A stretch of DNA of 64,000 bases, taken from positions 62,001 to 126,000 of IMG/VR virus record IMGVR_UViG_3300023174_002543; one strand, 5' to 3'. Below the pieces are notes generated by a model. It worked only from the letters and a program-made list of their open reading frames with translations, had not been told where the DNA came from and did not search any database. This document shows, piece after piece, positions 3,273-45,034 of this stretch (its first letter is position 1; the number at the start of each line of letters is the position of its first letter). Position numbers and translations under genes: made by a program.

Positions 3273-3983
3273 ATGGCAGCACCAGATCCATTCAATTCAG
3301 TAGGCGGTTATACAGTTGGAATCCCACCGCTACCAATTATTTCAGCTAATGGCAATATAAGTGCGGGTAATATCTCTGCTGATAATCTAACTATTACCTC
3401 TAATGTAACAGTCGGCGGAGATATTCGTGCGACCGGAGACATATATGGAGATACTTTTTATGGTAAGTTCGATGGCGCCATATCAGGAACATTAAATGTT
3501 CCGGGATTGTCTACTCAAATACTTTACAATACAAATGGTAATGCCGATGCTAGCCAAAATTTAACCTTTAATGCATCTACAAATACCCTTACTGTTCTAA
3601 ATGGATCTGTAACAGCTAATTCAATTACATTGGGTACAGGTCAAAATCAATTTAATACATCTTCTGTGTTTCGTTTAACTACATCTAGTACTGCACCTGA
3701 TCAAATATTAAATACAGTAAACGCATCTACAGTTTGTAGTATGGATTATATGATTATAGCAACTGATCCTGTAGCAAGCCGTAGACAAACAAGCAAAATT
3801 ATGGCTACTATATTAAACGGAAATGTTGAATATTATGAATACGGTACAATACAGGTACCTAATACAAGCCCGGGAGTCGCGGATCTTAAAGTGGCATATG
3901 TTGGTGGCAACGTTAATTTAACAGTAACACCTCTAACTAATAGTGTCAACTATAAAATAATGATAACAAGTTATAAAGAATAA
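3273..3983 (+). CDS. Virion fibre/decoration-like protein; N-terminal FNxxxG motif, C-terminal ~100-aa beta domain (here 'X')
   Basis: 236 aa; starts MAAPDPFNSVGGYTVG; C-terminal domain shared with 6026 and 10234. Confidence 0.6.
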   Translation: MAAPDPFNSVGGYTVGIPPLPIISANGNISAGNISADNLTITSNVTVGGDIRATGDIYGDTFYGKFDGAISGTLNVPGLSTQILYNTNGNADASQNLTFNASTNTLTVLNGSVTANSITLGTGQNQFNTSSVFRLTTSSTAPDQILNTVNASTVCSMDYMIIATDPVASRRQTSKIMATILNGNVEYYEYGTIQVPNTSPGVADLKVAYVGGNVNLTVTPLTNSVNYKIMITSYKE

Positions 3984-3994
3984 GGAAAACAAAA

Positions 3995-6013
3995 ATGGCA
4001 ATAAGAACATTTAATTCAGTGGCAGGTTTCTCAGTAGGTGAAGTACCAGAGACAATTATTACAACGACTGGTAACGTCACTACCGGTAACTTACTAACTG
4101 ACAATTTATATAAAGCAGACGGAGTAACTACATGGAATCTAAACGAAGCAGCAGGCTCTGTTAATCAGATTCAATTTAGTGACGGTAATGATTTAGATGC
4201 AAGCGCAAACTTAACATTTGTCGATGGTGCAAATCCAGTTTTAACTATCACAGGTAATGCTAACGTTACTAACGATTTGATTACATCAACTATTGTTACT
4301 GCCACCGGTGATCTTGTTATTGCTCCTGCAGCAGGTGGTGTTGTTAGTATTGCTGATACAGATGGAGGATCAACTGGTATTCAAGTTGGCACACCTACTG
4401 TAGGTAGTTTAACAAGCAATGCAGTTACTATGACTACTGAAACTAGTGTTACAGATGGCATTGCACAACTAAATGAAATCTTAGGTAAACTAGTTCCAGC
4501 TGCACCTCCTGATTTCCCTGCAAGTCAAACTATTGCAATTCAGAGTTTGTCATCATATCGTATGACTAACTTTACGCAAACTGATAATACTAGCACACAA
4601 GGTCATTCAGTAGCAGGTGGAACTACAGTTAACAAAATACGTAGAGCAAGTTCATATACTACTAACACTATAACAAATGCAGGTCCAGGCAATAACGGTA
4701 GAATTACTGCATATTTAAATGGTGTTGATGCTGGCAACGTGACATTAACTAATGCTCTTACTGGCGCAGGTACATATGGTAATTTAGTAATTACTAACAA
4801 TGTTGATTATAATGCAGTTAGCCCAAGCACACCTGCTGATTTTTGGAGTGTATTTTCAGCGACGGCAACTGGATCAGTAAGCCAAGGTTGGAATGAAGTT
4901 TATATACGTGATTCAGCAACTAATGCTAATACTAACGTAGTTCAATGGTATTATGATGCAAGTAATCCAGGTACACCGGTATTCAGTAGTACTTCAATTA
5001 CTGCACCAGTTAGTCCAACATTAACTTATTCAAGTACAATTCCACATTATGATTCTAGCAATCAATTTACTATTAATTTTAGTGTTAACAAACTAAGCGG
5101 TGATGTATATCCAACAAGCGATACATTTATAACAGGTACTGCAGGTGGCGCATTTAATGCCCCCGCTAGCGTAACATACGCAACGGCAGGTGTTACAACT
5201 CCATTAGCAAGAAATTTACATGTATCTAGTGGAACACAATCAGTAACAACTACTGCAGGTATTATTACTGGATTTGGTTCAAGTTCAGGTAGTCCTTCAG
5301 TAACGGTGAATAATAGTTATAATACTGCAAGTCAATCATTTGCTCCTGGTAAAACTGTACTATACAAGACAGGTACTGGTAGTTTAATGGAAGAAACTTC
5401 TATAACTATTGGTAGTACTATTGGTTCAGGTTCTGGATCAGCATCACGTATTGTTAATCCAGGTAGTGCAGATACACCGGCTATTTCAGCAAGTGCTTCT
5501 TTATTCAACAGTCAAACAGGCACGTTGCAAACATATGATGCAACAATTTCTGCCGGCGTACTAAAAAATGATGTGACTGATTATTCAACTGGATATTTTC
5601 CAGCTGGACCTAATTTAAGCGGTCAAGCTGCATCACAATATTTCACATTTAGATTTATTAGAACTTCTGTGAGTAAGTTTGATATTAAATGGACTGGTAC
5701 ACTTGCCGGATTATGGGTAGCATTACCAGGTAGTGTTATTGATACTAGCTCTACTTTGAACGGTTGGTTAACATTAGCTACTGCATATGCAGGAGCAGGA
5801 CAACCAGGTGCAGGAACTGGAGGTAACGGTAGTAACGGTGCTTCATTGGGTGGTACTGCTCCATTAGGAACGGCACAAACTAATAAGAGAATTACTGCAA
5901 CATTTGGTACTGCAAGTAGTTCAGGATCCGCAACAAATGAAATTTATGTAAGAATTAAATTAAACACTGGTCATTCAATCACGGCTCTATCATTAGAGAC
6001 AGCAAGCAATTAA
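3995..6013 (+). CDS. Virion structural protein, S/T/G-rich beta protein
   Basis: 672 aa; starts MAIRTFNSVAGFSVG; contains the NLYKADG..WNL..AAG..QIQF module shared with 6026 and 14047; AAGGA RBS. Confidence 0.6.
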   Translation: MAIRTFNSVAGFSVGEVPETIITTTGNVTTGNLLTDNLYKADGVTTWNLNEAAGSVNQIQFSDGNDLDASANLTFVDGANPVLTITGNANVTNDLITSTIVTATGDLVIAPAAGGVVSIADTDGGSTGIQVGTPTVGSLTSNAVTMTTETSVTDGIAQLNEILGKLVPAAPPDFPASQTIAIQSLSSYRMTNFTQTDNTSTQGHSVAGGTTVNKIRRASSYTTNTITNAGPGNNGRITAYLNGVDAGNVTLTNALTGAGTYGNLVITNNVDYNAVSPSTPADFWSVFSATATGSVSQGWNEVYIRDSATNANTNVVQWYYDASNPGTPVFSSTSITAPVSPTLTYSSTIPHYDSSNQFTINFSVNKLSGDVYPTSDTFITGTAGGAFNAPASVTYATAGVTTPLARNLHVSSGTQSVTTTAGIITGFGSSSGSPSVTVNNSYNTASQSFAPGKTVLYKTGTGSLMEETSITIGSTIGSGSGSASRIVNPGSADTPAISASASLFNSQTGTLQTYDATISAGVLKNDVTDYSTGYFPAGPNLSGQAASQYFTFRFIRTSVSKFDIKWTGTLAGLWVALPGSVIDTSSTLNGWLTLATAYAGAGQPGAGTGGNGSNGASLGGTAPLGTAQTNKRITATFGTASSSGSATNEIYVRIKLNTGHSITALSLETASN

Positions 6014-6025
6014 GGATAAAATATT

Positions 6026-8329
6026 ATGGCAATATCAGACGCACAAAAAGTAGACCTGTTATTTAAACAGGCATTCGGTGTAACTAAAACAGATACATCG
6101 ACTAATAAAAGTCCAAGTAATGAAGCTATTGCTAGTCCAGCGATAGTTCGCGGCGATAAAATTTGGAGTCAATCCGATCAGATACCAGGAACAGCGGCGG
6201 TCACTAGTGGAATTGTTGAACTTAAAAAGGTAGAATGTACCATTGATAATACTACTGTTCCTATAGGAGGTATTTACCCTACTTGGAAGACTGCATATAC
6301 TAATTGGATTCCTGTAGAATTTGGTCCTACATATTCTGTAAAAGTTTACGTTAATAATACTGGACAAAGTGCTGATCCTAGCGCAGGTGGTACGCAAATA
6401 TTTGATGCTGGTGTAGGTGGAGTAGGTGAATTTTACTTTAACTATAGCTCAGGCGTACTAAACTTTATTGGTGGCACGATACCTGCAGCATTGACAGGTA
6501 GTAAGAAGATTTATGTAGTTGGTTATAGATATATAGGTAGCGTTGGCTCTGCCGCACTACCATCAAATACTAATATTGGTAACATTAATATTACCGGTAA
6601 TACAATTAGTACTACTGACAATAATGGTAATACTGTTATAAGTGGTAATGGTACAGGTGGTGTAGAAATTGGTGGTACTGGTAATCTATATGCTACTAAC
6701 TTTATCGCTAGCGGTAATGTATATACTGATTCACTATTATATGCAAACGGTCAAGCATGGGACTTGCAAGAAGCAGCCGGTACTGATGGACAAATACAGT
6801 TCAACACCGGTGATAATTTTGCTGCAGATGCAAATTTATCATTCGACAGCGGTAACGCTAATCTAAAGATTATTGGTAATATTAACGTAGGTAGTACTGG
6901 TAATATAAAACTATACGGTAATGGCGCAATTAGTGCAACATCTATTAATGCTAATATAAGCGGTGACGTTGCTAATATTGGTGCTAACCTAAATGTATTG
7001 TACAATTATAATGGTAAGCTATCAAGTAATTCTACATTCCAATACACACCAGGATCAAATGCATTAACAGTTGGTAATAGTGTTACTAGTAACTACTTTA
7101 TTGGTAAATTTGATAGTACATCAAGTAACCAGTCAAATATTACTACATTAGGTAACTTAACAGTATTACAAGTTGGTAATACATCTACTACCGGCATTGT
7201 AAAACTTGACACAAATGGTAATGCTAATGCAGTTAACTTTAATGCATCAGGTGACATCAATGCAGTAAATGCAACATTCACTGGTAACTTAACTGTAACC
7301 GGTACAACTACATTCGTAAACACAACCGTTACTAGTATCAAAGATCCATTATTAACCTTAGGTGGTAATACTGACGGTGGTAATGCTACTTCATATGATG
7401 GTAAAGATAGAGGTTTAGTATTAGATAACTATACGAATGGTGTAACTCCTGGCCCATTAAATCAAGCATTCATTTGGAGAACATCTACTGGTCAATTTGA
7501 AGTTGGTGCAAACGTAGAAGTAACAGATAACGTTGTTGATATAAAACAATATGGAAATATAAAGGCATTAACATTCAAGGGTAATATTGATGCAACTAAT
7601 ATTGCAGGTACTCTTACTACTGCAAGTCAACCAAATATCACTAGTGTTGGTACATTGACCAGTGCAAATATTTCTGGATTGGCTAACGTAAGTCAATTAA
7701 AAGTTGGCGCAGTAATTTATCCCAATGTTGTAGGAACAGATGGTCAATATTTAAGAATAAATGCTACAAGTAATACAGTATATTATAGCAGTTTAGATAC
7801 AAGTAAAGTAGCAAATGGTACTACAGAGATAGAGTTATTAGAAGACAGTGATATAACATTTACAGTCGACGGAATAGCTAATGTTGTCATATTCAACACT
7901 GACGGAGCAAATATTGATGGTAACGCAAATGTATCAGGTAATGTAAATGCAATCGGCTCATTGAATGCGGATAGCGCAAATGTAACAAATGTTGTTATTG
8001 GTAATAGTAGCATTAGGGCCGCTACAGTAACTACTACTACAACATCATTGACTACCTTAGTAGCGTTAGACGCAGGTACATTTAGAGGTGTAGAATTTAT
8101 AATTAAGGGTGAAAATTCAACTGGTGGTAGATACAGTATTGCTACTATATTAGCAGTACACGACGGCGACAATCCGGTTGCAGTAGACTTTACTTCATAT
8201 GGATTAGTTAATTTAGGTGGTCAAACCGGAGTACTTACAGTAACCGGAGACGTAGATACAGTATATTTAAAAGTAACACCTAATAGCAATCAGTCAACTA
8301 TTTGGACAATTCAGTATAGACTAATCTAA
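6026..8329 (+). CDS. Fibre-like structural protein ending in domain X
   Basis: 767 aa; DP..G..DG.DRG module, TASQPNITSVGTL repeat, C-terminal X domain. Confidence 0.6.
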   Translation: MAISDAQKVDLLFKQAFGVTKTDTSTNKSPSNEAIASPAIVRGDKIWSQSDQIPGTAAVTSGIVELKKVECTIDNTTVPIGGIYPTWKTAYTNWIPVEFGPTYSVKVYVNNTGQSADPSAGGTQIFDAGVGGVGEFYFNYSSGVLNFIGGTIPAALTGSKKIYVVGYRYIGSVGSAALPSNTNIGNINITGNTISTTDNNGNTVISGNGTGGVEIGGTGNLYATNFIASGNVYTDSLLYANGQAWDLQEAAGTDGQIQFNTGDNFAADANLSFDSGNANLKIIGNINVGSTGNIKLYGNGAISATSINANISGDVANIGANLNVLYNYNGKLSSNSTFQYTPGSNALTVGNSVTSNYFIGKFDSTSSNQSNITTLGNLTVLQVGNTSTTGIVKLDTNGNANAVNFNASGDINAVNATFTGNLTVTGTTTFVNTTVTSIKDPLLTLGGNTDGGNATSYDGKDRGLVLDNYTNGVTPGPLNQAFIWRTSTGQFEVGANVEVTDNVVDIKQYGNIKALTFKGNIDATNIAGTLTTASQPNITSVGTLTSANISGLANVSQLKVGAVIYPNVVGTDGQYLRINATSNTVYYSSLDTSKVANGTTEIELLEDSDITFTVDGIANVVIFNTDGANIDGNANVSGNVNAIGSLNADSANVTNVVIGNSSIRAATVTTTTTSLTTLVALDAGTFRGVEFIIKGENSTGGRYSIATILAVHDGDNPVAVDFTSYGLVNLGGQTGVLTVTGDVDTVYLKVTPNSNQSTIWTIQYRLI

Positions 8330-8333: not shown

Positions 8334-8347
8334 ATAAGTATATAAAT
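8334..8347 (+). promoter_or_regulatory. Late promoter-like ATAAGTA / TATAAAT
   Basis: Intergenic ATAAGTA immediately followed by TATAAATG overlapping the start codon. Confidence 0.4.
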
Positions 8348-10232
8348 GGCAATCAAAAATTTTAATGTTGAACATGGCTTATCTGTCAATGATGTAACAA
8401 TCGTAGACAGTAATGCCAATGTTACTGCAAATACTTTAATATCTAATAACATTATTAGTACTAGCGGCACTAATAGTAATATTACCATCAATCCTGATGG
8501 TACCGGTATTATTGATGTAAGCAATAAAAAGATTAGTAATTTAGCTGAACCAATACTTGCAACAGACGCTGCTACAAAGGGTTATGTAGATGCGACTGCT
8601 CAAGGATTGAGTATTAAAAACTCAGTTCAATATGCAACAACTACTAATATTTTATTAGACGGAACAGTAACTACAATAGATGGTAAAACAGTAACTACCG
8701 GAGATCGTGTTCTAGTTAAAGACCAAACAGATAAAAGTAAAAATGGTATATACATAGCAAATACCACAGGTTCATGGACTCGTTCAGCAGATATGAATAT
8801 TGCTACTGAGATTTATGGTGCATTTACATTCGTTGAGACAGGTACTGAAAATCAATCAACTGGATGGGTAACTACTAATTCACCGCTAGATCCATTCACA
8901 TTGAATACAACTGATATAATATGGACACAGTTTAGTGGTACAGGTTCAGATATCAGTACAGATATAAACACGTTACATGTAACAGGTGGTACAAAAGATT
9001 ATGTATTGGCAGCTTCTGATAGTTTAGGTAACGTTGCTTTTGCTAATATTGCAAATTATTTCTTAGTTAAAACTGATATAACTACAGTGGTTGCAGGATC
9101 TACATTGGCCTTTACAATAGACTATGCTAATACTAGCTATCCCGGTGGAATATATACATTACAGCAATTGGGCCCGGTAAGTATGTCAATAAGCGACCAG
9201 TGGTCAATATCAGGTTCTAACGTTGGGACAACAAAAAACGCTTATGCAAATTATGTAGCAACTCAAGTTAATACTGCAAATGTAACAATAGCATTTACGT
9301 TAGCTAATGCTAATTTTAGTTTACAAACAACGGATACATTAACTATTGGTAGCACAGTAATAAATGACAGCAGTTCACCTAATCTAAGAACATTGTTATC
9401 TTCAATAAATGGAGTAAGTTCAGGTACTGTTACTATTCCAGCTACGAGTTTAAATGCAAACATAAACGCTAATGGGTTGAATACGGTAACAAACATAGTA
9501 AGCGTCAACCTTACTAATAGTAGAGGATCAACCGGTGCAGGTGTAAGTACGGCAAGTGGTACGAGTTTAGTGGCGACTGCTCCTACTGCATATAGTGTAA
9601 ACTCTATATCAGGTAGCTTCCCAAGTAGCAGTATACCATATTGGAGTTTAAATCAAACGTTTAACTGGACAGTGAGTACTACGGGCACTACTAGTGCGGG
9701 CAATTTAACATATAGCGGTGGCGCAATAAGCACTACCAGTTTATCAAGTGTGGGTGGCGCAAGCGGAACTAGCGGTAGCATAGATAGCACAAGTAGTTAT
9801 ACTATTACAACTAGTGATTATTATGGATTAGGATTAAATGGATATGGTAATAGAACTATTCCTAGTGCAGTAAATGGTACAGTAAGTGCTGCAACTAAAT
9901 ATTATCCGTTGTTTTGGAAGACAACTTCCAGTAGTGCATTACCAACCATAACAGTTAGTGATAGCCGTAATTCTAATAACTATGCTCTAGGGCAAGGTGC
10001 TACTACATCAACCACTGCTAGTAATTATCTTTGGTTAGCTATACCAAACGCAGGTAATGCTGCACCTTTGGCAAGTCATACCTTTAAGCATGTGTTTGGT
10101 GGATTTGATATTGTTGATACTCCTACGGTAACGGGCACACAATCTATATCTTCAGGCGGACAGAGTTACAATTATTCAATATATGGCTTTAGTGGTTTTA
10201 CGACAGCATCACTTATAATAACAACATCATAA
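8346..10232 (+). CDS. Tail-fibre-like protein with DAATKGYVD stalk, GDRVLVKDQ domain and C-terminal ~380-aa region 'Y'
   Basis: 628 aa; ISNLAEP..TDAATKGYVD and GDRVLVKDQT..KNGIY..WTRSAD are common phage fibre motifs; C-terminal region paralogous to 19408. Confidence 0.65.
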   Translation: MAIKNFNVEHGLSVNDVTIVDSNANVTANTLISNNIISTSGTNSNITINPDGTGIIDVSNKKISNLAEPILATDAATKGYVDATAQGLSIKNSVQYATTTNILLDGTVTTIDGKTVTTGDRVLVKDQTDKSKNGIYIANTTGSWTRSADMNIATEIYGAFTFVETGTENQSTGWVTTNSPLDPFTLNTTDIIWTQFSGTGSDISTDINTLHVTGGTKDYVLAASDSLGNVAFANIANYFLVKTDITTVVAGSTLAFTIDYANTSYPGGIYTLQQLGPVSMSISDQWSISGSNVGTTKNAYANYVATQVNTANVTIAFTLANANFSLQTTDTLTIGSTVINDSSSPNLRTLLSSINGVSSGTVTIPATSLNANINANGLNTVTNIVSVNLTNSRGSTGAGVSTASGTSLVATAPTAYSVNSISGSFPSSSIPYWSLNQTFNWTVSTTGTTSAGNLTYSGGAISTTSLSSVGGASGTSGSIDSTSSYTITTSDYYGLGLNGYGNRTIPSAVNGTVSAATKYYPLFWKTTSSSALPTITVSDSRNSNNYALGQGATTSTTASNYLWLAIPNAGNAAPLASHTFKHVFGGFDIVDTPTVTGTQSISSGGQSYNYSIYGFSGFTTASLIITTS

Positions 10233-12542: not shown

Positions 12543-13094
12543 ATGGCTAATAAGTATTTTAACGTAAGACAAGGTCTCCAGACCGGAAATATAACGTTAG
12601 ACGCCACGACGGGAAATGCCAATGTAGGCAATTTGTCCACTACGGACTTGAACGTAGCTGGAAACTTAAATTCGAACCTAATACCTAAGGTCGCATCTGG
12701 CGTACCTTCAGTTCTGTCATTAGGTACCAATCTACAACGATTCAAAGATTTATATCTGTCAGGAAATGTCAATCTTCCTGGTGGACAAACACTCACTGGC
12801 AATACGGATACTGCTAGTTTTTCTGGGAATGTATATACCCCAGGTGCACTAACAGCAAACGTCATAAATGCCAACACTATAGCAGTAAATACAGAATTTA
12901 CGCTAAATAGTACTATAAATTCAACTTCTACTGATACTGGTGCATTTACAACTATGGGCGGAATCGGAGTGAAGAAGGATGTAACAGTGGGGGGTGCTAT
13001 TAATTTAGCCAACTTTGCTGTTACAGGAACAACAGTTAGAAGCAGCATTTACCATGATGATACTTCTAACTCAATAACGTTTAAATTTAATTGA
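12543..13094 (+). CDS. Short fibre-like connector protein ending SITFKFN
   Basis: Track starts at TTG 12531; ATG 12543 gives MANKYFNVRQG, which matches the paralogous N-termini; C-terminus matches that of 14047. Confidence 0.6.
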   Translation: MANKYFNVRQGLQTGNITLDATTGNANVGNLSTTDLNVAGNLNSNLIPKVASGVPSVLSLGTNLQRFKDLYLSGNVNLPGGQTLTGNTDTASFSGNVYTPGALTANVINANTIAVNTEFTLNSTINSTSTDTGAFTTMGGIGVKKDVTVGGAINLANFAVTGTTVRSSIYHDDTSNSITFKFN

Positions 13095-19148: not shown

Positions 19149-19379
19149 ATGACATCTAATGTTGCGGCTAGACTAGATAGATCCGGAAAGTTCTACACCA
19201 GAGATGGTGTAGTGCTTGACGAGGTTACTCAATCAACTCACGGTATTACGCCAACAAAGGTATATGCAGGTGAGTTGGATGAAGTGACAACTCCGGACAG
19301 TAATAGGGTCATGCAGCAAAAGAAAACGGGTAAACTTATTATTTCAGGAGTTTTTGACGAGGTGTCTGGAATAACATAA
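19149..19379 (+). CDS. Small core protein 'Z' (76 aa) without insert
   Basis: AAGGAG RBS; ARL..SG.FYT..G..LDE and MQQKKTGKLIISG.FDE align with the flanks of 13108. Confidence 0.75.
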   Translation: MTSNVAARLDRSGKFYTRDGVVLDEVTQSTHGITPTKVYAGELDEVTTPDSNRVMQQKKTGKLIISGVFDEVSGIT

Positions 19380-26491: not shown

Positions 26492-26500
26492 AGGATAAAA

Positions 26501-30137: not shown

Positions 30138-30138
30138 C

Positions 30139-30510
30139 ATGGCAGCACCAAATTTAATCGGGGCAACAACAATAAACGGTAAAACCGCAGGGGCAAATTT
30201 AACAACAACAAGCGCAACACTAGTATTAAACAATGCGTCAAGTTCTGGTAAATGTTTGAAAGTAAACACACTAAACGTTACTAATACTACTAGTTCAGCA
30301 GTAAACATAACTATTGCATGGTACAATCAAGCAAGTTTAGGCGGCACAGCTTTTGCTATAGCAAGTGGTATGAGTGTTCCTGGTAATGCAACATTGAACG
30401 TAATTGATAAAAGTAGTCAATATTACTTAGAAGAAAATACAAGTTTAGGCGCCACCGCCGGTACCGGCAGTTCATTGATAGTAACTTGTAGTTACGAGGA
30501 CATTAGTTAA
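30139..30510 (+). CDS. Small beta-rich adaptor-like protein
   Basis: 123 aa; paralogue of 41919 (MAxPN..TTI.GKTAG, YLEEN.SL, CSYE.IS). Confidence 0.6.
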   Translation: MAAPNLIGATTINGKTAGANLTTTSATLVLNNASSSGKCLKVNTLNVTNTTSSAVNITIAWYNQASLGGTAFAIASGMSVPGNATLNVIDKSSQYYLEENTSLGATAGTGSSLIVTCSYEDIS

Positions 30511-30512
30511 AA

Positions 30513-39500: not shown

Positions 39501-39801
39501 AACACCGACAGTTAGTTCAGCAAGTACAGGCAGCGCATTATTAGTACAAGATGAAGGTACTGCATTAACTTATACTGCAAACACATTGAATTTTACAGGT
39601 TCCGGAGTAACTGCAACTAATAGTGGTAATGTGGTAACTGTAACAGTAGGTGGTACACCATTAGCAATTCAATTACAGGGTACTAACTTAACAACAACAG
39701 CAAACACAATCAATTTCGTAGGTGGCGGAACTAGCGTCACTGCTTCAGGTAATGTAGCAACAGTAAACATATTAAGCCCATTCTTGTTAATGGGAGCATA
39801 A
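36505..39801 (+). CDS. Long fibre protein ending PFLLMGA
   Basis: 1098 aa; repeated SNGNSNVNIPSANGN.NISA.GNAN modules, DP..DRG module, DQWY module. Confidence 0.7.
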   Translation: MALTKIPGFALDRTSNVTFANANVVGNLTSGNANLGNLATANFFSGNGSLLTGISTSIVSNGNSNVNIPSANGNVNISAVGNANIAVITGTGVNVAGYLTTTGNITANNVTANILVSTIATGTAPLTVTSNTKVTNLNADLLDGYNTATANTANTISVRDANGNLSANFFTGNGYYLTGIDQLAANSADAANYIANGTSNINTPVANGNITVSIAGVGNTVVFTSTGVNLSGYLNATGNLTASNLSLTGNVTSVLNVTGNANVGNLNTTGSVNANNLTLTGNLVVNGTTTTINSTTTYLDDPLLELGGNTNGAALQVNDGKDRGLYLHRYEGVAGSGGKLVDSFIGWDDSNAEFSFGSNVYVTNDVVTFNNLGNVRANYFFGNGSQLTGLSATTAISLINGSSNVVVTNNGNITAGVGGNASIMTLTPTGANFGGYITTIGNISAGNSVSATYFVGSGQYITGLGSLSNGTSNISIPTSSGNIVFSAGGSFAILQVTQTGTNASGYLTVSGNLLANTITSNGFANIQGSLTAANANLGNLATANYFNGTLTTLSNSQANIDTVGTLRYLNVSNSTGGNGNIVSINATLGNLARANFFQGDGGLLTNIGAPNLVFLGNSNINIPSANGNITVTVSGNANTVVFTGTGVNVAGYANITGTTTTGNLTVTSNITSGNANLGNLASANFISVTSNITAGNLIGSYANGNSNVNIPSANGNVNISAAGNANIVIVTGTGANITGTANVSGNLTAGNASLGNLANANYLQGTLITQNQPNITGLGTLLNIVVTANANIGGNVFIGNSSSNITLANTGVIIATGNLTAPNANLGNLVTANYTNAVLTTAAQPNITSIGTLGNLTVTNNVSANVLTTGSGTNGNLVINPDGTGQLIIDASTPLLLSGNTLTSNGNIAFSGANVTLGPAGNVRIAGGTVNQYLKTDGSGNLSWGTPSGGGGGGTALTYTAAATPPGTANIADQWYNTTTNTLYEYMNDGTTSFWIDIQTPTVSSASTGSALLVQDEGTALTYTANTLNFTGSGVTATNSGNVVTVTVGGTPLAIQLQGTNLTTTANTINFVGGGTSVTASGNVATVNILSPFLLMGA

Positions 39802-39810
39802 GGAAAATAT

Positions 39811-40140
39811 ATGGCAATAGTTTATAAAGTATTAGGACAATTAAATCCATCGGCAGCAACAGCAACAACATTATATACAGTACCTGCAAGTACAAGTACA
39901 GTAGCGTCTACTATTACAATTTGTAATCAAGCTGGAAGTAGTGACAATTATAGAATTGCAATTAGACCTGCAGGAGAAGCACTAGCCGCAAAACATTATA
40001 TTGCATATAACGGTGTTATTCCGGCATATGATAGTATAAGTTTAACAATTGGTATAACATTAGCAACAACAGATGTAGTTACCGTATATGCGGGTACTGC
40101 TAATTTAAGTTTTAATTTATTTGGTTCGGAGATTAGTTAA
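39811..40140 (+). CDS. Small beta-rich adaptor-like protein
   Basis: 109 aa; MAIVYKVLGQ..P.AATATTLYTVP ... FGSEIS; distant paralogue of 30139 and 41919. Confidence 0.6.
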   Translation: MAIVYKVLGQLNPSAATATTLYTVPASTSTVASTITICNQAGSSDNYRIAIRPAGEALAAKHYIAYNGVIPAYDSISLTIGITLATTDVVTVYAGTANLSFNLFGSEIS

Positions 40141-41087
40141 TGGCTGTAAAAACCCATAGCGTACAGAAACATAGTTCTAAGAATCTTAATAGTACTAATA
40201 TCACAAATCCACTTTCACCGTTCTTTTCTAGTATAAGTCCGGCAATCGGTGGTAAAACAACTTGGAATGCAACTGACGGAGATTTAGTAATTACTACTCC
40301 AGGAGAATATACTCTTATTGCAGGTACAGGCGGGTCAAAAATAATTAAAATGTGGGGTGCTGGTGGCAAGCCCACAAACGGTGGAAGTGTGTCTTGGGGC
40401 GCCGGCGGAGCCGGCGGTGGTGCAGTAGGAACAGTCACGTTTGTCGGTGGCACTACTTATAAAATAAGAGTGCCTTCGGCGGGTAATAATAGTGGCACTA
40501 ACCCAGCAACTGCATATGGTGGCGGTAACGGAGGCGGTACATACTCAGTGGGTGTTAGTGGAGGTGGTGGTGGCTATGCTGGAATATTCAATACCTCAGT
40601 TACACAGGGCAATGCAGTATTAATGGCAGGTGGAGGAGGTGGCGGTGCATCTCATAGAGGTGACGGACTTGGTGGTCGCCCCGGAGTAGCCGGAGGCGGA
40701 ACTACTGGACAAAACGCCGCAGATGCATATATCTCTAGTCCTGGAACACAATCTGCAGGTGGTATTACTGCTAGCGGCGGATCAGGTGGACAAACAGGCT
40801 CTGCACTACAGGGTGGTAATTCTAGCGGAGGTGGAGGTGGAGGTGGCGGTGGTTACTGGGGAGGTGGCGGAGGTGGCCCTCAAGCAACTCAATCTGACGG
40901 TGCCTGTGGAGGCGGTGGTGGAAGTGGATATTATAACCCGTCCGTAGTGACATCAGCTACACTATATACTGGCTCAGGTACCACACCGGGTAACTCAGGT
41001 GATTCAGATAGACCGACAAACGTGGGTGGGTCTGGTGCTGGTTTAGGTACAGCCTATGACGGTGCTGTAGTAATAAAGGCAACTTAA
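40140..41087 (+). CDS. Glycine-rich-domain protein
   Basis: IKMWGAGG..GAGGAGGG, AGGGGG, GGGGSGYY, DGAVVIK; TAATG overlap. Confidence 0.7.
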   Translation: MAVKTHSVQKHSSKNLNSTNITNPLSPFFSSISPAIGGKTTWNATDGDLVITTPGEYTLIAGTGGSKIIKMWGAGGKPTNGGSVSWGAGGAGGGAVGTVTFVGGTTYKIRVPSAGNNSGTNPATAYGGGNGGGTYSVGVSGGGGGYAGIFNTSVTQGNAVLMAGGGGGGASHRGDGLGGRPGVAGGGTTGQNAADAYISSPGTQSAGGITASGGSGGQTGSALQGGNSSGGGGGGGGGYWGGGGGGPQATQSDGACGGGGGSGYYNPSVVTSATLYTGSGTTPGNSGDSDRPTNVGGSGAGLGTAYDGAVVIKAT

Positions 41088-41116: not shown

Positions 41117-41917
41117 ATGGCATTCCCAACATCACCAATAGACGGACAAGTAACAATACAAAATGGTATACGATATACCTATGCTTCCGCCACAAATAGT
41201 TGGACACGCAGTCCGGCGACTAGTTCTACACTAAGTGTTATTAGTGATAGTTTTACCGGTGATGGCACTACAGTTAGTTATACATTAAGCAACACACCGG
41301 CAAGTATTGATGTAGTGACTGCTATTGTAGACGGTGTACCTCAATTACGTGGTGCTTTTACACTATTAAGTAATGTTGTAACATTTACCGGTACCCCTTC
41401 AAATGGTGCATTAATTGAAGTACGTACAATGCAAGCAAGTGGTTTAGGTATATTAACTGGATTAGTCTATGATACTTTCACTGGAAACGGTAGTACAACT
41501 GCTTATACATTAACTACACAACCATCAAATAAAAATTTTACAATAGTAACAATTGGTGGACTAGTTCAAAATAAAGTTAACTACAACGTAAGTGGAACAA
41601 CACTTACATTCACTACAGCACCCCCAAACACATCACCTATTGAAGTAATCACATTAGGTCCTGCAATTACTACATCAACACCAAACACTTTACAAAACGG
41701 TACTAGTAGTGTAAATGTATTGCAAAATGGTAATGTAACTATATCAAGCGCAGGTACAAGTAACGTAGTTGTAGTAAGTAATACAGGTGCTACAGTAACA
41801 AATGCATCTATTACTGGAAATTTAACAGTATCAGGTAACATTATCACACCAAGTGGACAAGTGGTAAATACTTTAGGAAAAAGTATAGCAATGTCCATAG
41901 TATTCGGAGGAATTTAA
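41117..41917 (+). CDS. Short fibre/connector with two FTGDG domains, ending SIVFGGI
   Basis: MAFPTSP..GQ..GIRYTY; SDSFTGDGTTVSYTL and YDTFTGNGSTTAYTL. Confidence 0.6.
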   Translation: MAFPTSPIDGQVTIQNGIRYTYASATNSWTRSPATSSTLSVISDSFTGDGTTVSYTLSNTPASIDVVTAIVDGVPQLRGAFTLLSNVVTFTGTPSNGALIEVRTMQASGLGILTGLVYDTFTGNGSTTAYTLTTQPSNKNFTIVTIGGLVQNKVNYNVSGTTLTFTTAPPNTSPIEVITLGPAITTSTPNTLQNGTSSVNVLQNGNVTISSAGTSNVVVVSNTGATVTNASITGNLTVSGNIITPSGQVVNTLGKSIAMSIVFGGI

Positions 41918-41918
41918 A

Positions 41919-42281
41919 ATGGCAAATCCAAACATAGTAAACGTAACGACAATCACAGGAAAAACAGCAGGACAGGCTATAACAACATCACCAACTGCAA
42001 TAGTAACTAATAGCGCCAGTAGTGGAAAATTATTAAAAATAAACTCATTATATATTTCAAATGTTAACGGGACAGGAAGTGCAGACGTTACAGTAGATGT
42101 TTATAAAAATGGTGCTACTGCTTATAGATTGGCATATTTAATCACAGTACCGGCAAAATCAACTATAAATGTAATTGCAAAAGATGTACAAGTTTATTTA
42201 GAAGAAAATGATAGTTTAAGATTAACTGCTAGTAGTAGTAGTTACCTTGAAGGTGTATGTAGTTATGAGGAAATTAGTTAA
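41919..42281 (+). CDS. Small beta-rich adaptor-like protein
   Basis: 120 aa; paralogue of 30139, ends CSYEEIS. Confidence 0.6.
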   Translation: MANPNIVNVTTITGKTAGQAITTSPTAIVTNSASSGKLLKINSLYISNVNGTGSADVTVDVYKNGATAYRLAYLITVPAKSTINVIAKDVQVYLEENDSLRLTASSSSYLEGVCSYEEIS

Positions 42282-43426
42282 TGAGTACTAATCCGTTTAA
42301 GGGACTCGGGGCAATAAATCTATTGCCATCAGATCCTGCTATATATCCAACAATGAAACTTAACAGCATCGGTGCACGTAGTATATCTTTGGGTATGCAA
42401 TATTTCTATAGCTACAATGGTTATTGGCCAAATCTTGGAACTAGTATGGGTATAGCAGTAGCACACGCAGGTAGTCCATATGTTACTATATATTCACAAT
42501 CAAACGACTTACTTAGTAAAGTAAATGATCCAACTACTTTACCTGCGTCAACGGCGCAGAGTGTTTCAGTTAGTCCTGATACCATATACCTAACAGTATC
42601 ACATGCAACTACCCCGTATATTACTATATATAAAAGAAGTGGTGATACATTCACTAAATTACCTAACCCAACTACATTACCTTCTAATACCACCTGGGCA
42701 ACGATGTTTAGTTCTGACGGGGTATACCTTGCAACTGTACACACAAATCCTCCTTATGTTACTATATATAAAAGAAATGGAGACACATTTACTAAATTAA
42801 CTGACCCAGCTACATTACCTGCATCTCTTGGTAATGGTGTAGCATTTAGTCCAGATGTTACATATCTGACCGTAGCACACGATACTACCCCGTTTATTAC
42901 TATCTATAAAAGAAGCGGTGACACGTTTACTAAATTAACTAATCCATCTACCTTACCCACTGGAGCAGGCAATGGTGTTGCATTTAGTGCAGATGGTACT
43001 TATATGGCAGTAGCCCATTCAATTACTCCATTTATTACTATCTATAAAATCGATAAAGCAACAGATACGTTTACTAAATTATCTAATCCAAGTACATTGC
43101 CTACAAATACCGCCAATGCTGTGGCATTTAGTCCAGACGGTACTTATTTAGCAGTAGGACACTCAGTGAGCCCATATATCACTATCTATAAAAGAAGTGG
43201 TGATACATTCACTAAGTTAAGTAATCCATCTACATTACCTTCACCTTCAACTACTATTAATTGTGTAGCATTTAGTCCTGATAATATTTATTTGGCATTA
43301 ACACATGCTGGCGGTACTTTTCTTGCTATATACAAAAGAAGTGGCGATACCTTCACTAAAATGAGTGATCCTAGTGTGATACCTGCCAGTGCGGCTAATG
43401 GGGTAACATTTATACCCGTAATATAA
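42281..43426 (+). CDS. Seven-bladed beta-propeller (WD40-like) protein
   Basis: Seven ~46-aa repeats of the type VAFSPDGTYLAV.H...PYITIYKRSGDTFTKL.NP.TLP. Confidence 0.8.
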   Translation: MSTNPFKGLGAINLLPSDPAIYPTMKLNSIGARSISLGMQYFYSYNGYWPNLGTSMGIAVAHAGSPYVTIYSQSNDLLSKVNDPTTLPASTAQSVSVSPDTIYLTVSHATTPYITIYKRSGDTFTKLPNPTTLPSNTTWATMFSSDGVYLATVHTNPPYVTIYKRNGDTFTKLTDPATLPASLGNGVAFSPDVTYLTVAHDTTPFITIYKRSGDTFTKLTNPSTLPTGAGNGVAFSADGTYMAVAHSITPFITIYKIDKATDTFTKLSNPSTLPTNTANAVAFSPDGTYLAVGHSVSPYITIYKRSGDTFTKLSNPSTLPSPSTTINCVAFSPDNIYLALTHAGGTFLAIYKRSGDTFTKMSDPSVIPASAANGVTFIPVI

Positions 43427-43442
43427 AATAGGATAACAAACA

Positions 43443-44150
43443 ATGGCATTAACACAACTAGAATCATACATGGTAAACAGTACAGGTACATCGTTTACTT
43501 TCCCAAATGTTACTGTAACCGGTAACGTAACAGGAACTTATTTTAATGGCAATGGTTCAGCATTAACCGGTATAGTAGCGACTGTTGCACAAACAGTAAC
43601 AACGGCTGCACAACCTAATATTACAAGTTTTGGTACACTAACCAATACAATATTAGGTGGAAGTAACTCATTTACCGGTGGTAATTTAGTAAGTGCTAAT
43701 TATGTAGCCGGCACACTAACAACAGCCGCACAACCCAATATTACTTCGGTTGGTATATTGACTGGTTTAACAGTATCCGGTCCCACCTCTTATGGATTAT
43801 CCTCTGACATTCTTATTACTAAGTCCGGTTCAACCGGGGTAGTAGTACATGATATAGCACCTGGCGCAGTTTTTTATCATACTAGTGTTGCCGCAAATTT
43901 TACTGCAAATTTTACTAATGTGCCTACTACTGAGGGTAGAGTATTAATGGCAACTATTATAATTAGTCAAGGTGCTACACCCTACATATCAAATGGAGTG
44001 CAAATTGACGGATCATCACAAACTATAAAATGGCTTGGTTCAGCCGCACCAACCGGCACTGCAAGTAAAATAGACATAATATCGTTTAGTTTAATAAGAA
44101 CAGGTGCTGCTTGGATCGTTCTTGGACAAGCGTCAGTAAATTACGGATAA
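43443..44150 (+). CDS. Short fibre protein with a C-terminal phage-tail-type beta domain
   Basis: MALTQ..FTFPNVTV, two QPNIT repeats, IIISQG..IKWLG..APTGT..DIISF..W. Confidence 0.6.
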   Translation: MALTQLESYMVNSTGTSFTFPNVTVTGNVTGTYFNGNGSALTGIVATVAQTVTTAAQPNITSFGTLTNTILGGSNSFTGGNLVSANYVAGTLTTAAQPNITSVGILTGLTVSGPTSYGLSSDILITKSGSTGVVVHDIAPGAVFYHTSVAANFTANFTNVPTTEGRVLMATIIISQGATPYISNGVQIDGSSQTIKWLGSAAPTGTASKIDIISFSLIRTGAAWIVLGQASVNYG

Positions 44151-44155
44151 TAACA

Positions 44156-45034
44156 ATGAGACTTAACTCGTTTTCTGGATCAAAAATATCGTCAGCTGCG
44201 ATCCCGGGTTCTAGTGGCGGCGGGGCCAGTCCAACAGGTCAAGTAGTTTTTGCTGTGAATATTGGTGGATCTACTTCATTGAATACAACATGGACTGCGC
44301 CTGCAGGTGTTACTAGTGTTAGTGTTTTAGTAGTCGGTGGAGGTGGATATAATGCAAGTATAAATAACGGAGGAACAGGTGGAGGTGGCGCCGGCGCACT
44401 GGCATATAAGAATAACATAACTGTTGTACCCGGGAATGGTTATGTGGTTGTAGCTGGTGGCTCAGGTAATCCAGGTCCAGGTGGTAGTTCGTCTTTTACT
44501 GCAGGATTTGGCACAATAACTGCCGGAGGCGGTGGTGGTTCTTCAGTTTTTAACGTTAGTGCTAGAAACGGTGGCGCAGGCGGACAACCATCAGGTGTAT
44601 ATGATGCAGGATTTGCGGGAGGTAATGGTGGAAGTTACGCAACTGGTACAGGTTGGGGAGGTGGCGGTGGGGCAGCCGGATATTCAGGGGCAGGCGGTAC
44701 TGGAGGAAGTAACAATGCTGCTGGCAATGCCGCCGCTACAGATAGCGGAGGTGGTGGCGGGGGCGGAAGTGGCTCAGGCCAAGGTGGCACAACAGGTGGA
44801 AATATAGGTTTATTAGGAAAAGGCTCAACCGGGACAGGCGGCGCCTCTGGTGCAAATCCCGGCAACCCGGGTAGCGATGGAGGGGCGGGTGGGCTTGGTG
44901 GTATGTTTGGATATGGTGGCGGTGGGTCTGGTTGGAACGGTGGGTCTAGTGCTATGGGAGGCAGGGGCGCAGTACGCATAATATGGCCGGGTACTACTAG
45001 ACAATTTCCATCAACTCAAACAGGTGATTTATAA
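44156..45034 (+). CDS. Glycine-rich-domain protein
   Basis: TWTAPAGVTSVSVLVVGGGG, GGRGAVRIIWPG..RQFPST; ATG 44156 preferred over the track's TTG 44111, which overlaps the upstream gene. Confidence 0.7.
   Translation: MRLNSFSGSKISSAAIPGSSGGGASPTGQVVFAVNIGGSTSLNTTWTAPAGVTSVSVLVVGGGGYNASINNGGTGGGGAGALAYKNNITVVPGNGYVVVAGGSGNPGPGGSSSFTAGFGTITAGGGGGSSVFNVSARNGGAGGQPSGVYDAGFAGGNGGSYATGTGWGGGGGAAGYSGAGGTGGSNNAAGNAAATDSGGGGGGGSGSGQGGTTGGNIGLLGKGSTGTGGASGANPGNPGSDGGAGGLGGMFGYGGGGSGWNGGSSAMGGRGAVRIIWPGTTRQFPSTQTGDL

What the first reader, a model, noticed from the sequence alone, without database searches (positions are those of the whole stretch)
3273..45034. Gene-order-encoded docking grammar: a candidate head-to-tail chained, plug-and-play fibre system
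Seen: four junction types recur, and the C-terminus of the upstream gene predicts the start of the next gene in every instance. These are X-domain to FN motif (3/3), region Y to DAATK motif (2/2), FxFN to core Z to KSGTRxYG (2/2), and FGG/MGA to adaptor to tip (3/3). The protein interiors are shuffled freely while the termini co-vary with the neighbouring gene. From 6026 to 22714 every junction is one of these types. Inference: the termini are cognate docking pairs, so gene order specifies the order of segments in a multi-protein filament that can be lengthened or re-tipped by cassette exchange. The logic resembles docking domains in modular PKS/NRPS assembly lines; I do not know of such a code being described for phage fibres.
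Basis: partly seen in the sequence, partly recalled or inferred. Interest (0 to 1): 0.92.

Follow-up and report, generated by a model that had tools for sequence, protein, structure and literature searches.

The report
Conserved joints between phage fibre genes
An uncultured giant phage carries about 30 consecutive fibre-protein genes in which the end of one gene predicts the start of the next, a rule that holds across about 180 related contigs, probably because neighbouring products join into composite fibres as in phage T4's long tail fibre; physical docking is still untested.

Summary
The rules hold in 278 non-redundant junctions from 186 related loci: X to FN 77/78, Y to DAATK 13/13, FxFN to Z 17/18, Z to KSGTR 10/11, and hydrophobic tail to small jellyroll protein 26/28.

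I found two more junction types. The first, SL|QAFG (g5|g6, 19/19), is conserved as far as Caulobacter phage phiCbK. The second is an XD-type jellyroll followed by a TF/IAGQ start.

A gene's C-terminal type almost fully determines the next gene's N-terminal type (MI/H 0.96). A protein's own two ends are only loosely coupled (0.34).

The docking interpretation is plausible but unproven:
- g13 carries CBA120 TSP4/T4 gp10-like assembly domains.
- Natural link units exist, such as CcrColossus gp088 (QAFG…SL) and g11.
- Junction termini are more conserved than shafts, and only the chain-end C-terminus is variable.

However, X to FN is equally explained by tandem FN…X paralogues. It is also not strictly orthogonal. 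Tight linkage plus recombination within the shafts is a sufficient neutral null for every junction.

This is a large-scale variant of known multi-protein fibres (T4 gp34-37, branched tailspike complexes), not a new category.

The parts
183..3157 (+). Context: head genes g1-g3, which I read by position and relatives as prohead protease, scaffold and major capsid protein (g3, 1961-3157)
   Evidence: The MCP is 64-68% identical to Rak2/PA5oct/2.275.O-type jumbo phages. It is 79-93% identical to 80 IMG/VR contigs.
3273..3983 (+). g4: FN1 start (MAAPDPFNSVGGYTVGIPP), short shaft, X1 domain (3678-3980)
3995..6013 (+). g5: FN2 start; body matches phrog_8578 (the phiCbK gp073 family); SL C-terminal domain (5681-6010)
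6026..8329 (+). g6: QAFG N-terminal domain (6026-6367; phrog_9417, the phiCbK gp074 family), shaft, X2 domain (8027-8326)
8346..10232 (+). g7: FN start, shaft, Y domain (9783-10229)
10234..12510 (+). g8: DAATK N-terminus, shaft, X3 domain (12217-12507)
12543..13094 (+). g9: FN4 start (MANKYFNV; an upstream TTG at 12531 is also possible), short shaft, FxFN C-terminus
13108..14004 (+). g10: connector Z (conserved N- and C-terminal peptides) with an inserted Laminin_G_3 lectin-like domain
14047..19137 (+). g11: 1696-aa link unit, KSGTRxYG start and FxFN end
19149..19379 (+). Z' (g10b): 76-aa minimal connector without the lectin domain
19408..21783 (+). g12: KSGTRxYG start, shaft, Y domain (21334-21780)
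21785..22714 (+). g13: DAATK start, XD2/3-like jellyroll (22187-22369), Gly linker, XD1-like domain (22379-22711). It is the chain-end protein; its C-terminus is only 10-18% identical in orthologues.
22714..24851 (+). g14 (TIG/He_PIG Ig-like domains) and g15 (Gly_rich_2): candidate adhesin or tip proteins
24926..26857 (+). g16 (TF-type start, C-terminal XD-type jellyroll at 26297-26479) and g17 (118 aa, phrog_7759)
26949..31664 (+). g18 (TF start, two XD-type jellyrolls, hydrophobic tail …NLVFGG), then g19 (123-aa jellyroll 'adaptor', 30139-30510), then g20 (Gly_rich_2 tip)
31680..36494 (+). g21: 1604 aa, He_PIG plus six Laminin_G_3 domains (lectin-like)
36505..41087 (+). g22 (TF start, tail …SPFLLMGA), then g23 (109-aa jellyroll family member), then g24 (glycine-rich tip)
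41117..43426 (+). g25 (two XD-type jellyrolls, tail …SIVFGGI), then g26 (120-aa jellyroll), then g27 (beta-propeller tip)
43443..45034 (+). g28 (TF-type short fibre) and g29 (glycine-rich, related to g15/g20/g24)

Best explanation
The window comes from an uncultured jumbo phage; a 367-kb IMG/VR contig is 100% identical over the 76-aa Z' protein and encodes the same fibre gene series. Downstream of the capsid gene it holds a co-transcribed array of more than 40 kb of trimeric fibre segments, small connector proteins and lectin-like or glycine-rich tip proteins.

Consecutive genes most likely encode consecutive parts of composite fibres. The C-terminal module of one product is the seat for the N-terminus of the next, or for a small connector that bridges them. 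This is the logic of T4 gp34-gp35-gp36-gp37(-gp38), repeated many times.

I commit to these as physical joints:
- SL|QAFG
- Y|DAATK
- FxFN|Z|KSGTR, with Z as a gp35-like knee protein
- hydrophobic tail | small jellyroll protein | variable tip
- XD-type jellyroll | TF/IAGQ start

X|FN may be a further coaxial joint. Equally, it may mark the end of one composite fibre and the start of the next.

What is shown: the modules exist, their positions are fixed, neighbours are near-deterministic, spacing is tight, g13 is homologous to TSP4 XD domains, link units exist, and tips are exchanged.

What is inferred: physical binding, trimeric stoichiometry, assembly order, and where on the virion the fibres attach (tail or head).
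For: 1. All reader junctions are confirmed.
2. In 278 non-redundant junctions: X1-3 to FN 77/78, SL to QAFG 19/19, Y to DAATK 13/13, FxFN to Z 17/18 (the 18th is a GTG-start Z'), Z to KSGTR 10/11, tail to jellyroll 26/28. MI/H is 0.96 for junctions against 0.34 within proteins.
3. Junctions persist while the outer ends change. Y|DAATK has four upstream N-terminal types and five downstream C-terminal types. X3|FN4 sits behind DAATK-, QAFG-, FN- or other-start carriers. SL|QAFG sits in segment 1, 2 or 3 of the array.
4. SL|QAFG is conserved in phiCbK gp073|gp074.
5. CcrColossus gp087-gp088-gp089 and Gurke 04070-04060-04050 read …SL | QAFG…SL | QAFG…, a natural extension unit. g11 is the same for KSGTR…FxFN.
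6. g13 residues 199-306 match CBA120 TSP4-N XD1 (E 4.5e-14), preceded by an XD2-like jellyroll. XD2/XD3 are experimentally shown docking platforms (PMC8825819).
7. The X model (pLDDT 90.8) best matches T4 gp9, the long-tail-fibre connector (TM 0.72), and a Klebsiella phage baseplate chain.
8. Between orthologues, junction termini are 51-94% identical and shafts 35-62%. The only non-junction C-terminus (g13) is 10-18% identical.
9. Gaps are -1 to 13 nt at internal joints, and no terminator-like site stands out within 3273-23000 (8 weak sites found, 10.0 expected from shuffles).
Against: - No binding data, and no multimer model could be run.
- Modules 0-40 bp apart stay linked under neutral recombination within long repetitive shafts, so co-occurrence alone does not need selection.
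- Many loci are orthologous, so the counts are not independent events.
- The FxFN-Z-KSGTR block is one conserved syntenic block in about 18 genomes.
- SL, QAFG and Y have no solved relatives by sequence.
- No module matches T4 gp34-37 significantly.
- The literature treats XD1, the fold class closest to g13's C-terminus and possibly to X, as a spacer rather than a docking face.
- One hydrophobic-tail fibre lacks the jellyroll protein (L158).
- The small jellyroll could itself be a terminal lectin knob rather than an adaptor.
Confidence: 0.55

Rival explanations
1. History and linkage only. The array arose by tandem and segmental duplication of fibre genes. Recombination occurs preferentially inside the long repetitive shafts, so the C-terminal domain of one gene and the N-terminal motif of the next (0-40 bp apart) are inherited as one DNA block. 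Each protein attaches to the virion independently. The 'grammar' carries no assembly information.
For: - Typical relatives have four tandem genes, FN1…X1 | FN2…X2 | FN3…X3 | FN4…X4. The first FN has no X before it, and the last X (X4) has no FN after it. That pattern gives X to FN automatically.
- Distant contigs also show tandem FN…X genes.
- Shafts share generic repeats.
- Link units such as QAFG…SL are exactly what an unequal crossover or a duplication spanning a junction would produce.
- FN subtypes blur between X1- and X2-followers.
Against: - QAFG, DAATK (extreme N-terminal form), KSGTR and Z were never seen without their upstream partner module in about 60 non-redundant cases. Ordinary phage mosaicism favours breakpoints at gene boundaries.
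- Termini are under stronger constraint than shafts, while the chain-end C-terminus is free to vary.
- The SL|QAFG pairing survives between jumbo myovirus-like contigs and Caulobacter siphophages, where everything around it differs.
- TSP4-type assembly domains are present.
Confidence: 0.2
2. All junction types, including X|FN, are orthogonal cognate docking pairs. On this view g6 to g13 (about 5,500 residues per chain) form one head-to-tail filament whose order is programmed purely by terminal specificity, as PKS/NRPS docking domains do.
For: - Every junction from 6026 to 22714 is a recurrent type.
- FN subtype tracks the upstream X subtype: nearest-neighbour agreement is 29/31, 16/24 and 13/13.
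- X3|FN4 is invariant behind four carrier types.
- X3 is more conserved than the shaft.
- The X fold resembles T4 gp9, to which the gp34 N-terminus attaches coaxially.
- By eye, the FN motif resembles the gp34 N-terminus (F-x4-G-L-x2-G).
Against: - Tandem paralogy predicts the same adjacency.
- X occurs in 2-10 tandem copies and is a very common C-terminal domain (7,215 representative clusters). No X-FN fusion was seen among the seven retrieved representatives, which included five with an internal best match.
- In L115, X2 is followed by an FN 89% identical to X1-followers, so there is no strict orthogonality.
- The FN HMM does not match gp34 significantly.
- Which gp9 domain X matches is unresolved, and 7REJ was not among the fold hits.
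Confidence: 0.17
3. The small proteins (the 104-123 aa jellyroll 'adaptor', and Z/Z') are fibre-specific assembly chaperones or terminal lectin knobs that co-vary with the preceding fibre's C-terminus. Lambda Tfa, Mu U or T4 gp38 behave this way. On this view they are not bridges to the next protein.
For: - They lie immediately downstream of a fibre gene, 1-10 nt away.
- A homologue is annotated 'putative lectin'.
- The fold is a generic oligomerising jellyroll like TNF-type lectins and the Sf6 needle knob.
- Downstream 'tips' are very heterogeneous.
Against: - There is no Pfam or PHROG match to Tfa or gp38 families.
- The jellyroll is not a Tfa fold.
- In the core version of the module the next protein is a conserved 132-145 aa protein ending in an XD-type jellyroll. 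That is itself followed by a fixed fibre start, which looks like a relay rather than a dead end.
- Z is always flanked on both sides by fixed partners.
Confidence: 0.25

Closest known systems
T4 long tail fibre, genes 34-35-36-37(-38)
   Same: Co-oriented, tightly spaced genes (8, 62 and 8 nt gaps) whose order equals the order of segments. Trimeric segments are joined end to end, with a small non-fibrous knee protein (gp35) between two segments. The fibre N-terminus sits coaxially on a trimeric socket, gp9. Z/Z' between FxFN and KSGTR is the same layout.
   Different: No significant sequence match of any module to gp34-37. This array has at least six recurrent junction types and about 30 genes rather than one four-protein fibre. 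The junction cassettes are reused and duplicated.
Branched tailspike complexes built on T4 gp10-like XD domains (CBA120 TSP1-4, G7C gp63.1/gp66, RaK2 gp528 network, phiKp24)
   Same: g13 carries an XD1 homologue (E 4.5e-14 to PDB 7REJ) and an XD2/3-like jellyroll. The same 61-aa jellyroll recurs in g16, g18 and g25. In that literature these modules mediate trimer-trimer assembly, and modular exchange of receptor-binding proteins is documented.
   Different: In the known systems the XD modules lie in the N-terminal region of a hub protein, and the partners branch off it. Here they lie at or near C-termini, and the implied geometry is serial. The profile match of the jellyroll to 7REJ is weak (E 0.15).
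phiCbK-like Caulobacter/Brevundimonas phage genes gp073|gp074 (phrog_8578 | phrog_9417), next to the gp76 lectin-like head-filament candidate
   Same: The same SL C-terminal domain is followed by the same QAFG N-terminal domain. The pair lies downstream of head genes and upstream of a giant lectin-like or glycine-rich protein. The window has the same layout (giant LamG ORF from 51949).
   Different: Those phages are siphoviruses, and the function of gp073/gp074 is unknown. FN, X, Y and Z modules are absent there. gp76 as the head filament is itself only a bioinformatic proposal (PMC3556154).
T2/S16-type gp37-gp38 tip adhesin
   Same: The fibre gene is followed by a separately encoded distal protein. 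Here the tips are glycine-rich (Gly_rich_2 in g15 and g20).
   Different: An extra small jellyroll protein lies in between. There is no sequence match of g15 to any solved structure. Whether the fold is similar was not tested.
Docking domains of modular PKS/NRPS
   Same: In both, the C-terminus of one gene product would pair with the N-terminus of the next, so that gene order gives assembly order.
   Different: This is an analogy only. The modules here are 60-150 aa beta domains, or whole small proteins, of structural trimers. Orthogonality of the pairs is not shown and is contradicted in one case (L115).

Membership tests
T4-type serial multi-protein tail fibre (gp34-35-36-37) | Consecutive, co-oriented, tightly spaced genes for the fibre segments | tested here: met
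   Gaps are -1 to 42 nt from 3273 to 24851, and no terminator-like site stands out there (8 found, 10.0 expected from shuffles). T4 gaps are 8, 62 and 8 nt.
T4-type serial multi-protein tail fibre (gp34-35-36-37) | Small non-fibrous connector protein between two trimeric segments (gp35) | tested here: inconclusive
   Z (298 aa) and Z' (76 aa) always lie between an FxFN end and a KSGTR start. They show no homology to gp35, and their location in the virion is unknown.
T4-type serial multi-protein tail fibre (gp34-35-36-37) | Sequence homology to gp34/35/36/37 | tested here: not met
   The FN, KSGTR, X, SL, QAFG, Y, FxFN and Z HMMs against T4 gp34-37 all gave E above 1e-3, even in a 4-sequence database.
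T4-type serial multi-protein tail fibre (gp34-35-36-37) | Physical end-to-end joining of the gene products in gene order | not testable with these tools
   This needs multimer modelling, pull-downs or EM.
gp10-like XD-domain receptor-binding-protein assemblies (CBA120 TSP4/TSP2, G7C gp66, RaK2 gp528) | XD1 domain (T4 gp9/gp10-like beta-sandwich) | tested here: met
   g13 residues 199-306 match TSP4-N 70-174 (PDB 7REJ/7RFO/7RFV), E 4.5e-14. Domain limits are from PMC8825819.
gp10-like XD-domain receptor-binding-protein assemblies (CBA120 TSP4/TSP2, G7C gp66, RaK2 gp528) | XD2/XD3 small beta-jellyroll that docks a partner trimer | tested here: inconclusive
   g13 residues 151-219 match TSP4 205-270 with i-E 0.0017. 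Pfam DUF4183 matches with E 1.7e-5. The profile of 11 copies matches 7REJ only at E 0.15, but it matches a cyanophage fibre and a 'tail adaptor protein' at about 1e-7.
gp10-like XD-domain receptor-binding-protein assemblies (CBA120 TSP4/TSP2, G7C gp66, RaK2 gp528) | XD modules in the N-terminal region of a hub protein, after a baseplate anchor, with partners branching off | tested here: not met
   Here the modules are C-terminal or near C-terminal (g13, g16, g18). 28 of 86 copies in the data set are at the extreme C-terminus.
phiCbK gp073/gp074 gene pair (phrog_8578 / phrog_9417) | Full-length profile match and adjacency of the two genes | tested here: met
   g5 residues 129-668 match phrog_8578 (E 3.4e-90) and g6 residues 1-177 match phrog_9417 (E 5e-26). 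The SL and QAFG HMMs hit phiCbK gp073 and gp074 at about 1e-24.
Tail-fibre assembly chaperones (lambda Tfa / Mu U / T4 gp38, gp57A), considered for g19/g23/g26 and Z | Homology or fold of a known chaperone family | tested here: not met
   There are no Pfam or PHROG chaperone hits. The g19 model is a jellyroll closest to Ena pilins, nucleoplasmin and TNF-like lectins.
PKS/NRPS-type orthogonal docking code | Mutually orthogonal cognate pairs that alone fix the order | tested here: inconclusive
   FN subtype mostly follows X subtype, but 6 of 24 X2-followers are nearest to X1-followers, and one is 89% identical to an X1-follower. Binding specificity is not testable here.

The most novel reading that the evidence does not exclude
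The terminal modules, X|FN included, are true orthogonal docking pairs. On this reading gene order in this phage clade programs one or a few very long hetero-polymeric filaments (g6 to g13 is about 5,500 residues per chain) that evolve by inserting or swapping junction-flanked cassettes. The shared SL|QAFG core and giant lectin gene, next to the head genes, would identify the same apparatus as the so far unassigned head filament of phiCbK-like phages.
Probability: 0.15. Interest if true: 0.85.

Novelty: new variant of a known kind. Interest (0 to 1): 0.55.

Why it matters
If the junction cassettes are physical joints, they give a readable rule for how very large environmental phages build and diversify composite adhesion fibres from about 30 genes.

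They would also give a parts list of candidate connector domains with no solved structure: SL, QAFG, Y, Z and the small jellyroll.

Finally, they give a testable handle on two unknown-function genes (gp073 and gp074) of the laboratory phage phiCbK. Those genes sit beside its proposed head-filament gene.

If the pattern is only linkage, it is still a clean example of how recombination within repetitive shafts shapes fibre gene arrays.

Tried and rejected
- Idea: the small 'adaptor' (g19/g23/g26) is a free-standing X domain. Rejected: hhalign probability was 0.2%, and no two module families are detectably related. X against the g13 XD1 region also gave nothing.
- Recent gene conversion at junctions. 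Rejected: DNA around the two Y|DAATK junctions is 44-56% identical, no higher than elsewhere.
- Fused 'Rosetta-stone' proteins (X-FN, SL-QAFG, Y-DAATK in one chain). None were found in the local ORF sets, nor among the seven representatives I retrieved and read, five of which had an internal best match (P0015, P0021, P0030, P0085, P0143). Internal X copies were tandem X repeats or a read-through artefact.
- The search for related loci with the 12-sequence X alignment failed because the alignment was too divergent.
- Isolated phages have no close homologues of g7 or g8.
- PA5oct has a fibre gene after its MCP but none of the modules. Position next to the capsid gene therefore does not decide between head and tail.
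- Sequence searches of the PDB for X, SL, QAFG, Y, the g11 N-terminus and g15 gave nothing meaningful.
- The T4 late-promoter motif TATAAATA is not enriched. The sigma-70 and terminator scans were uninformative inside the array.
- The FN HMM against the T4 gp34 N-terminus was not significant, despite a visible F-x4-G-L-x2-G resemblance.
- The look-up of encoding contigs on distant X proteins mostly returned contigs too short to be useful.

Full report
**What the window is.** The plus strand carries 35 called genes plus one giant open-ended ORF. By position and relatives, g1-g3 look like prohead protease, scaffold and major capsid protein. The capsid protein is 64-68% identical to Rak2/PA5oct/Vibrio 2.275.O-type jumbo phages. 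It is 79-93% identical to 80 IMG/VR contigs. One IMG/VR contig of 367,104 bp (loci L083/L166) encodes the same proteins, and its Z' is 100% identical to the window's. The source is therefore an uncultured jumbo phage. From 3273 onward nearly everything is fibre-like: T/S/N/G-rich repetitive shafts with no Pfam family. These are interspersed with Laminin_G_3, He_PIG/TIG, Gly_rich_2 and beta-propeller proteins.

**Checking the observation.**
- X to FN: g4|g5, g6|g7, g8|g9.
- Y to DAATK: g7|g8, g12|g13.
- FxFN to Z to KSGTRxYG: g9|g10|g11 and g11|ORF 19149-19379|g12.
- Hydrophobic tail to small protein to tip: g18|g19|g20, g22|g23|g24, g25|g26|g27.

Iterated HMMs show the modules are genuine domains at fixed positions. 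X (98 aa), SL (110 aa) and Y (150 aa) are always C-terminal in the local set. QAFG (114 aa) and Z are always N-terminal.

One part of the description does not hold inside the window. Paralogous termini are only 26-55% identical, about the same as the interiors, and junction DNA is about 50% identical. These are old paralogues, not recently exchanged cassettes.

**Related loci.** I assembled 186 loci. They came from MCP relatives, a DAATK/shaft query, a Z' query and annotated phages. After removing junctions more than 80% identical, 278 remained:
- X1-3 to FN: 77/78
- X4 to non-FN: 8/8
- SL to QAFG: 19/19
- Y to DAATK: 13/13
- FxFN to Z: 17/18 (the odd one is a GTG-start Z' that my caller missed)
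- Z to KSGTR: 10/11
- Hydrophobic tail to jellyroll protein: 26/28

The C-terminal type of a gene almost fully determines the N-terminal type of the next gene (MI/min entropy 0.96; permutation maximum 0.32 bits against an observed 1.85). A protein's own N- and C-terminal types are only loosely coupled (0.34).

- g5|g6 is an SL domain followed by a QAFG domain, often with an ATGA overlap. It is the deepest-conserved pair. g5 matches phrog_8578 and g6 matches phrog_9417, which are phiCbK gp073 and gp074.
- A 61-aa XD-type jellyroll at a C-terminus is usually followed by a 'MAISKIAGQML'/TF-type fibre start (13/19).

In more distant relatives a conserved relay appears downstream of the capsid gene, after two small conserved genes. 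It reads: a fibre of about 200 aa with a hydrophobic tail, then a 104-aa jellyroll, then a 132-145 aa protein ending in the XD-type jellyroll, then an SL protein of about 1,135 aa, then a QAFG protein.

**Evidence that bears on docking rather than mere adjacency.**

(a) Junctions persist while the outer ends change. Y|DAATK occurs with four different upstream N-termini and five downstream C-termini. X3|FN4 is invariant whether X3 is carried by a DAATK-, QAFG-, FN- or other-start protein. SL|QAFG is found inside segment 1, 2 or 3 of the FN…X array, always leaving FNi in front and Xi behind. A two-gene unit thus replaces a one-gene unit.

(b) Natural link units exist. CcrColossus gp087-gp088-gp089 and Brevundimonas phage Gurke 04070-04060-04050 read …SL | QAFG…SL | QAFG…. 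phiCbK has only …SL | QAFG…. In the window, g11 (KSGTR…FxFN) plays the same role between Z and Z'.

(c) There is homology to known assembly domains. g13 residues 199-306 match the XD1 domain of CBA120 TSP4-N (E 4.5e-14), preceded by an XD2-like jellyroll and a glycine linker. In TSP4 and T4 gp10, XD2 and XD3 bind partner trimers (PMC8825819). RaK2 is proposed to use the same principle (PMC10253068).

(d) Structure predictions add context. The X domain folds with pLDDT 90.8 into a seven-stranded sandwich. Its best solved matches are T4 gp9, the long-tail-fibre connector (TM 0.72, rmsd 2.6 Å), and a Klebsiella phage baseplate chain. The small 'adaptor' g19 folds with pLDDT 90.3 into a jellyroll. 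It resembles oligomerising jellyrolls such as Ena pilins, nucleoplasmin, TNF-like lectins and the Sf6 needle knob.

(e) The constraint pattern between orthologues fits. Junction-forming termini are 51-94% identical against 35-62% for shafts. The C-terminus of g13, the only fibre end in that block without a downstream partner module, is 10-18% identical.

(f) Tips are exchanged. The same jellyroll subtype is followed by glycine-rich, LamG, beta-propeller or other proteins in different genomes.

**Evidence against, or limits.**
- X to FN is exactly what tandem paralogues of a whole FN…X gene give. Typical relatives have FN1…X1 | FN2…X2 | FN3…X3 | FN4…X4. The first FN follows a non-fibre gene after about 450 nt, and the last X (X4 subtype) is followed by a gap and a non-FN gene.
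- The X family is very large: 7,215 representative clusters at E ≤ 1e-3. It often occurs as 2-10 tandem copies. I saw no X-FN fusion.
- Distant contigs again show tandem FN…X genes.
- FN subtypes mostly follow the upstream X subtype, but 6 of 24 X2-followers are closest to X1-followers. In L115, an X2 is followed by an FN 89% identical to an X1-follower. A strict orthogonal code for X|FN is therefore not supported.
- More generally, two modules separated by 0-40 bp will stay together under neutral recombination if breakpoints fall in kilobase-long repetitive shafts. Co-occurrence alone does not prove selection.
- The FxFN-Z-KSGTR arrangement is a single syntenic block in about 18 genomes.
- No module matches T4 gp34-37 significantly.
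- SL, QAFG and Y have no solved relatives.
- The literature regards XD1 as a spacer rather than a docking face.
- I could not run any multimer prediction.

**Most likely mechanism.** I conclude that the array encodes composite fibres assembled from consecutive gene products, in the manner of T4 gp34-gp35-gp36-gp37 (PMC3004832). The joints would be SL|QAFG, Y|DAATK, FxFN|Z|KSGTR (with Z as a knee or connector protein), hydrophobic tail|jellyroll|tip, and XD-type jellyroll|TF. X|FN is either a further coaxial joint, like gp9-gp34, or the boundary between separate composite fibres. In the second case the fibres would be g4; g5+g6; g7+g8; and g9+g10+g11+Z'+g12+g13. The idea that the small proteins are chaperones or knobs (0.25) overlaps with the others.

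**Head or tail.** The attachment site is open. The array follows the capsid gene, and it shares the SL|QAFG pair and a giant lectin-like gene with the region of phiCbK that holds its proposed head-filament gene. However, PA5oct also has a mass-spectrometry-detected 'tail fiber' gene after its capsid gene.

**Novelty.** Gene order matching fibre order (T4) and plug-in receptor-binding proteins on conserved docking domains (CBA120, G7C, RaK2, phiKp24) are both known. What is new is threefold. The first is the scale and regularity, with at least six recurrent junction cassettes over about 30 genes. The second is the C-terminal, and hence serial, placement of the assembly modules. The third is the link between an uncultured jumbo-phage clade and the unassigned phiCbK gp073/gp074 pair. 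I rate this as a new variant of a known kind and of moderate interest. It deserves multimer modelling, and a simple genetic test in phiCbK or CcrColossus on laboratory Caulobacter strains.

Noticed in passing
window 51949-64000 (+): A single ORF starts at 51949 and runs off the end of the window (at least 4,017 aa). It consists of tandem ConA/Laminin-G-like lectin repeats. The ORF listing does not list it because it is open-ended. It parallels the 2,750-2,800 aa 'putative lectin-like domain protein' (phiCbK gp76, CcrColossus gp091) that sits just after the SL|QAFG pair in those phages.
   Followed up: partly
window 3183-3208: A perfect 11-bp hairpin flanked by an A-run and a T-run (AAAAAGAGCAC CGAA GTGCTCTTTTT) lies between the capsid gene and g4. 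It looks like a bidirectional intrinsic terminator. No comparably strong hairpin follows until at least 23000; the other seven terminator-like sites in 3100-23000 are weak and fewer than the shuffles give.
   Followed up: no
L003, L010, L012, L014, L016, L017 and others, between the MCP and the first FN gene: Relatives carry variable inserts between the capsid gene and the first fibre gene. These include proteins with C-terminal Cys/His-rich motifs, a conserved hydrophobic protein of about 235 aa (MxEILYTLIVTHITI…) and a 122-125 aa protein (MIVLAPISVGELIDK…). The first fibre gene is then preceded by an ORF-free gap of about 450 nt.
   Followed up: no
   Followed up: no
window 26501-26857 (g17); L183, L097: A conserved 117-120 aa non-fibrous protein (phrog_7759, MSHFAQIDENNIV…) recurs between an XD-jellyroll-ending protein and a TF-type fibre. 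It could be another connector or a chaperone.
   Followed up: partly
L158: 208-2682, 4982-9460 and 9489-9818: These are exceptions to the tail-to-jellyroll rule. A fibre ending …SPFLLMGA is followed directly by a TF-type fibre with no jellyroll protein. Separately, a g23-like jellyroll follows a LamG-type tip protein rather than a hydrophobic-tail fibre.
   Followed up: partly
window 10234-10335 and 21785-21880 (g8 and g13 N-termini): The motif 'KNVxxPxxxxDAATKxYVD' also occurs at residues 150-177 of solved capsule depolymerase tailspikes (9m4c, 9m4d). There it lies just after the N-terminal particle-binding region. It is therefore a widespread start-of-module motif, not specific to this phage.
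   Followed up: partly
P0085 (representative protein, 273 aa): An FN1…X1-type protein whose X domain is followed by about 40 residues of low-quality sequence. It looks like a read-through or frameshift in the source assembly, not a true fusion.
   Followed up: no
window 14047-19137 (g11, around residues 867-985); g12 around residues 60-140: The module that follows the KSGTR start (…DPxxDxGxGxxGxALTxNDxxxRG…FMGWxxSNxxFxF) is also a very common internal shaft module. It had 185 internal hits in the loci and also occurs in the PA5oct 'tail fiber protein H'. Only the first 15 residues or so are specific to the junction.
   Followed up: partly
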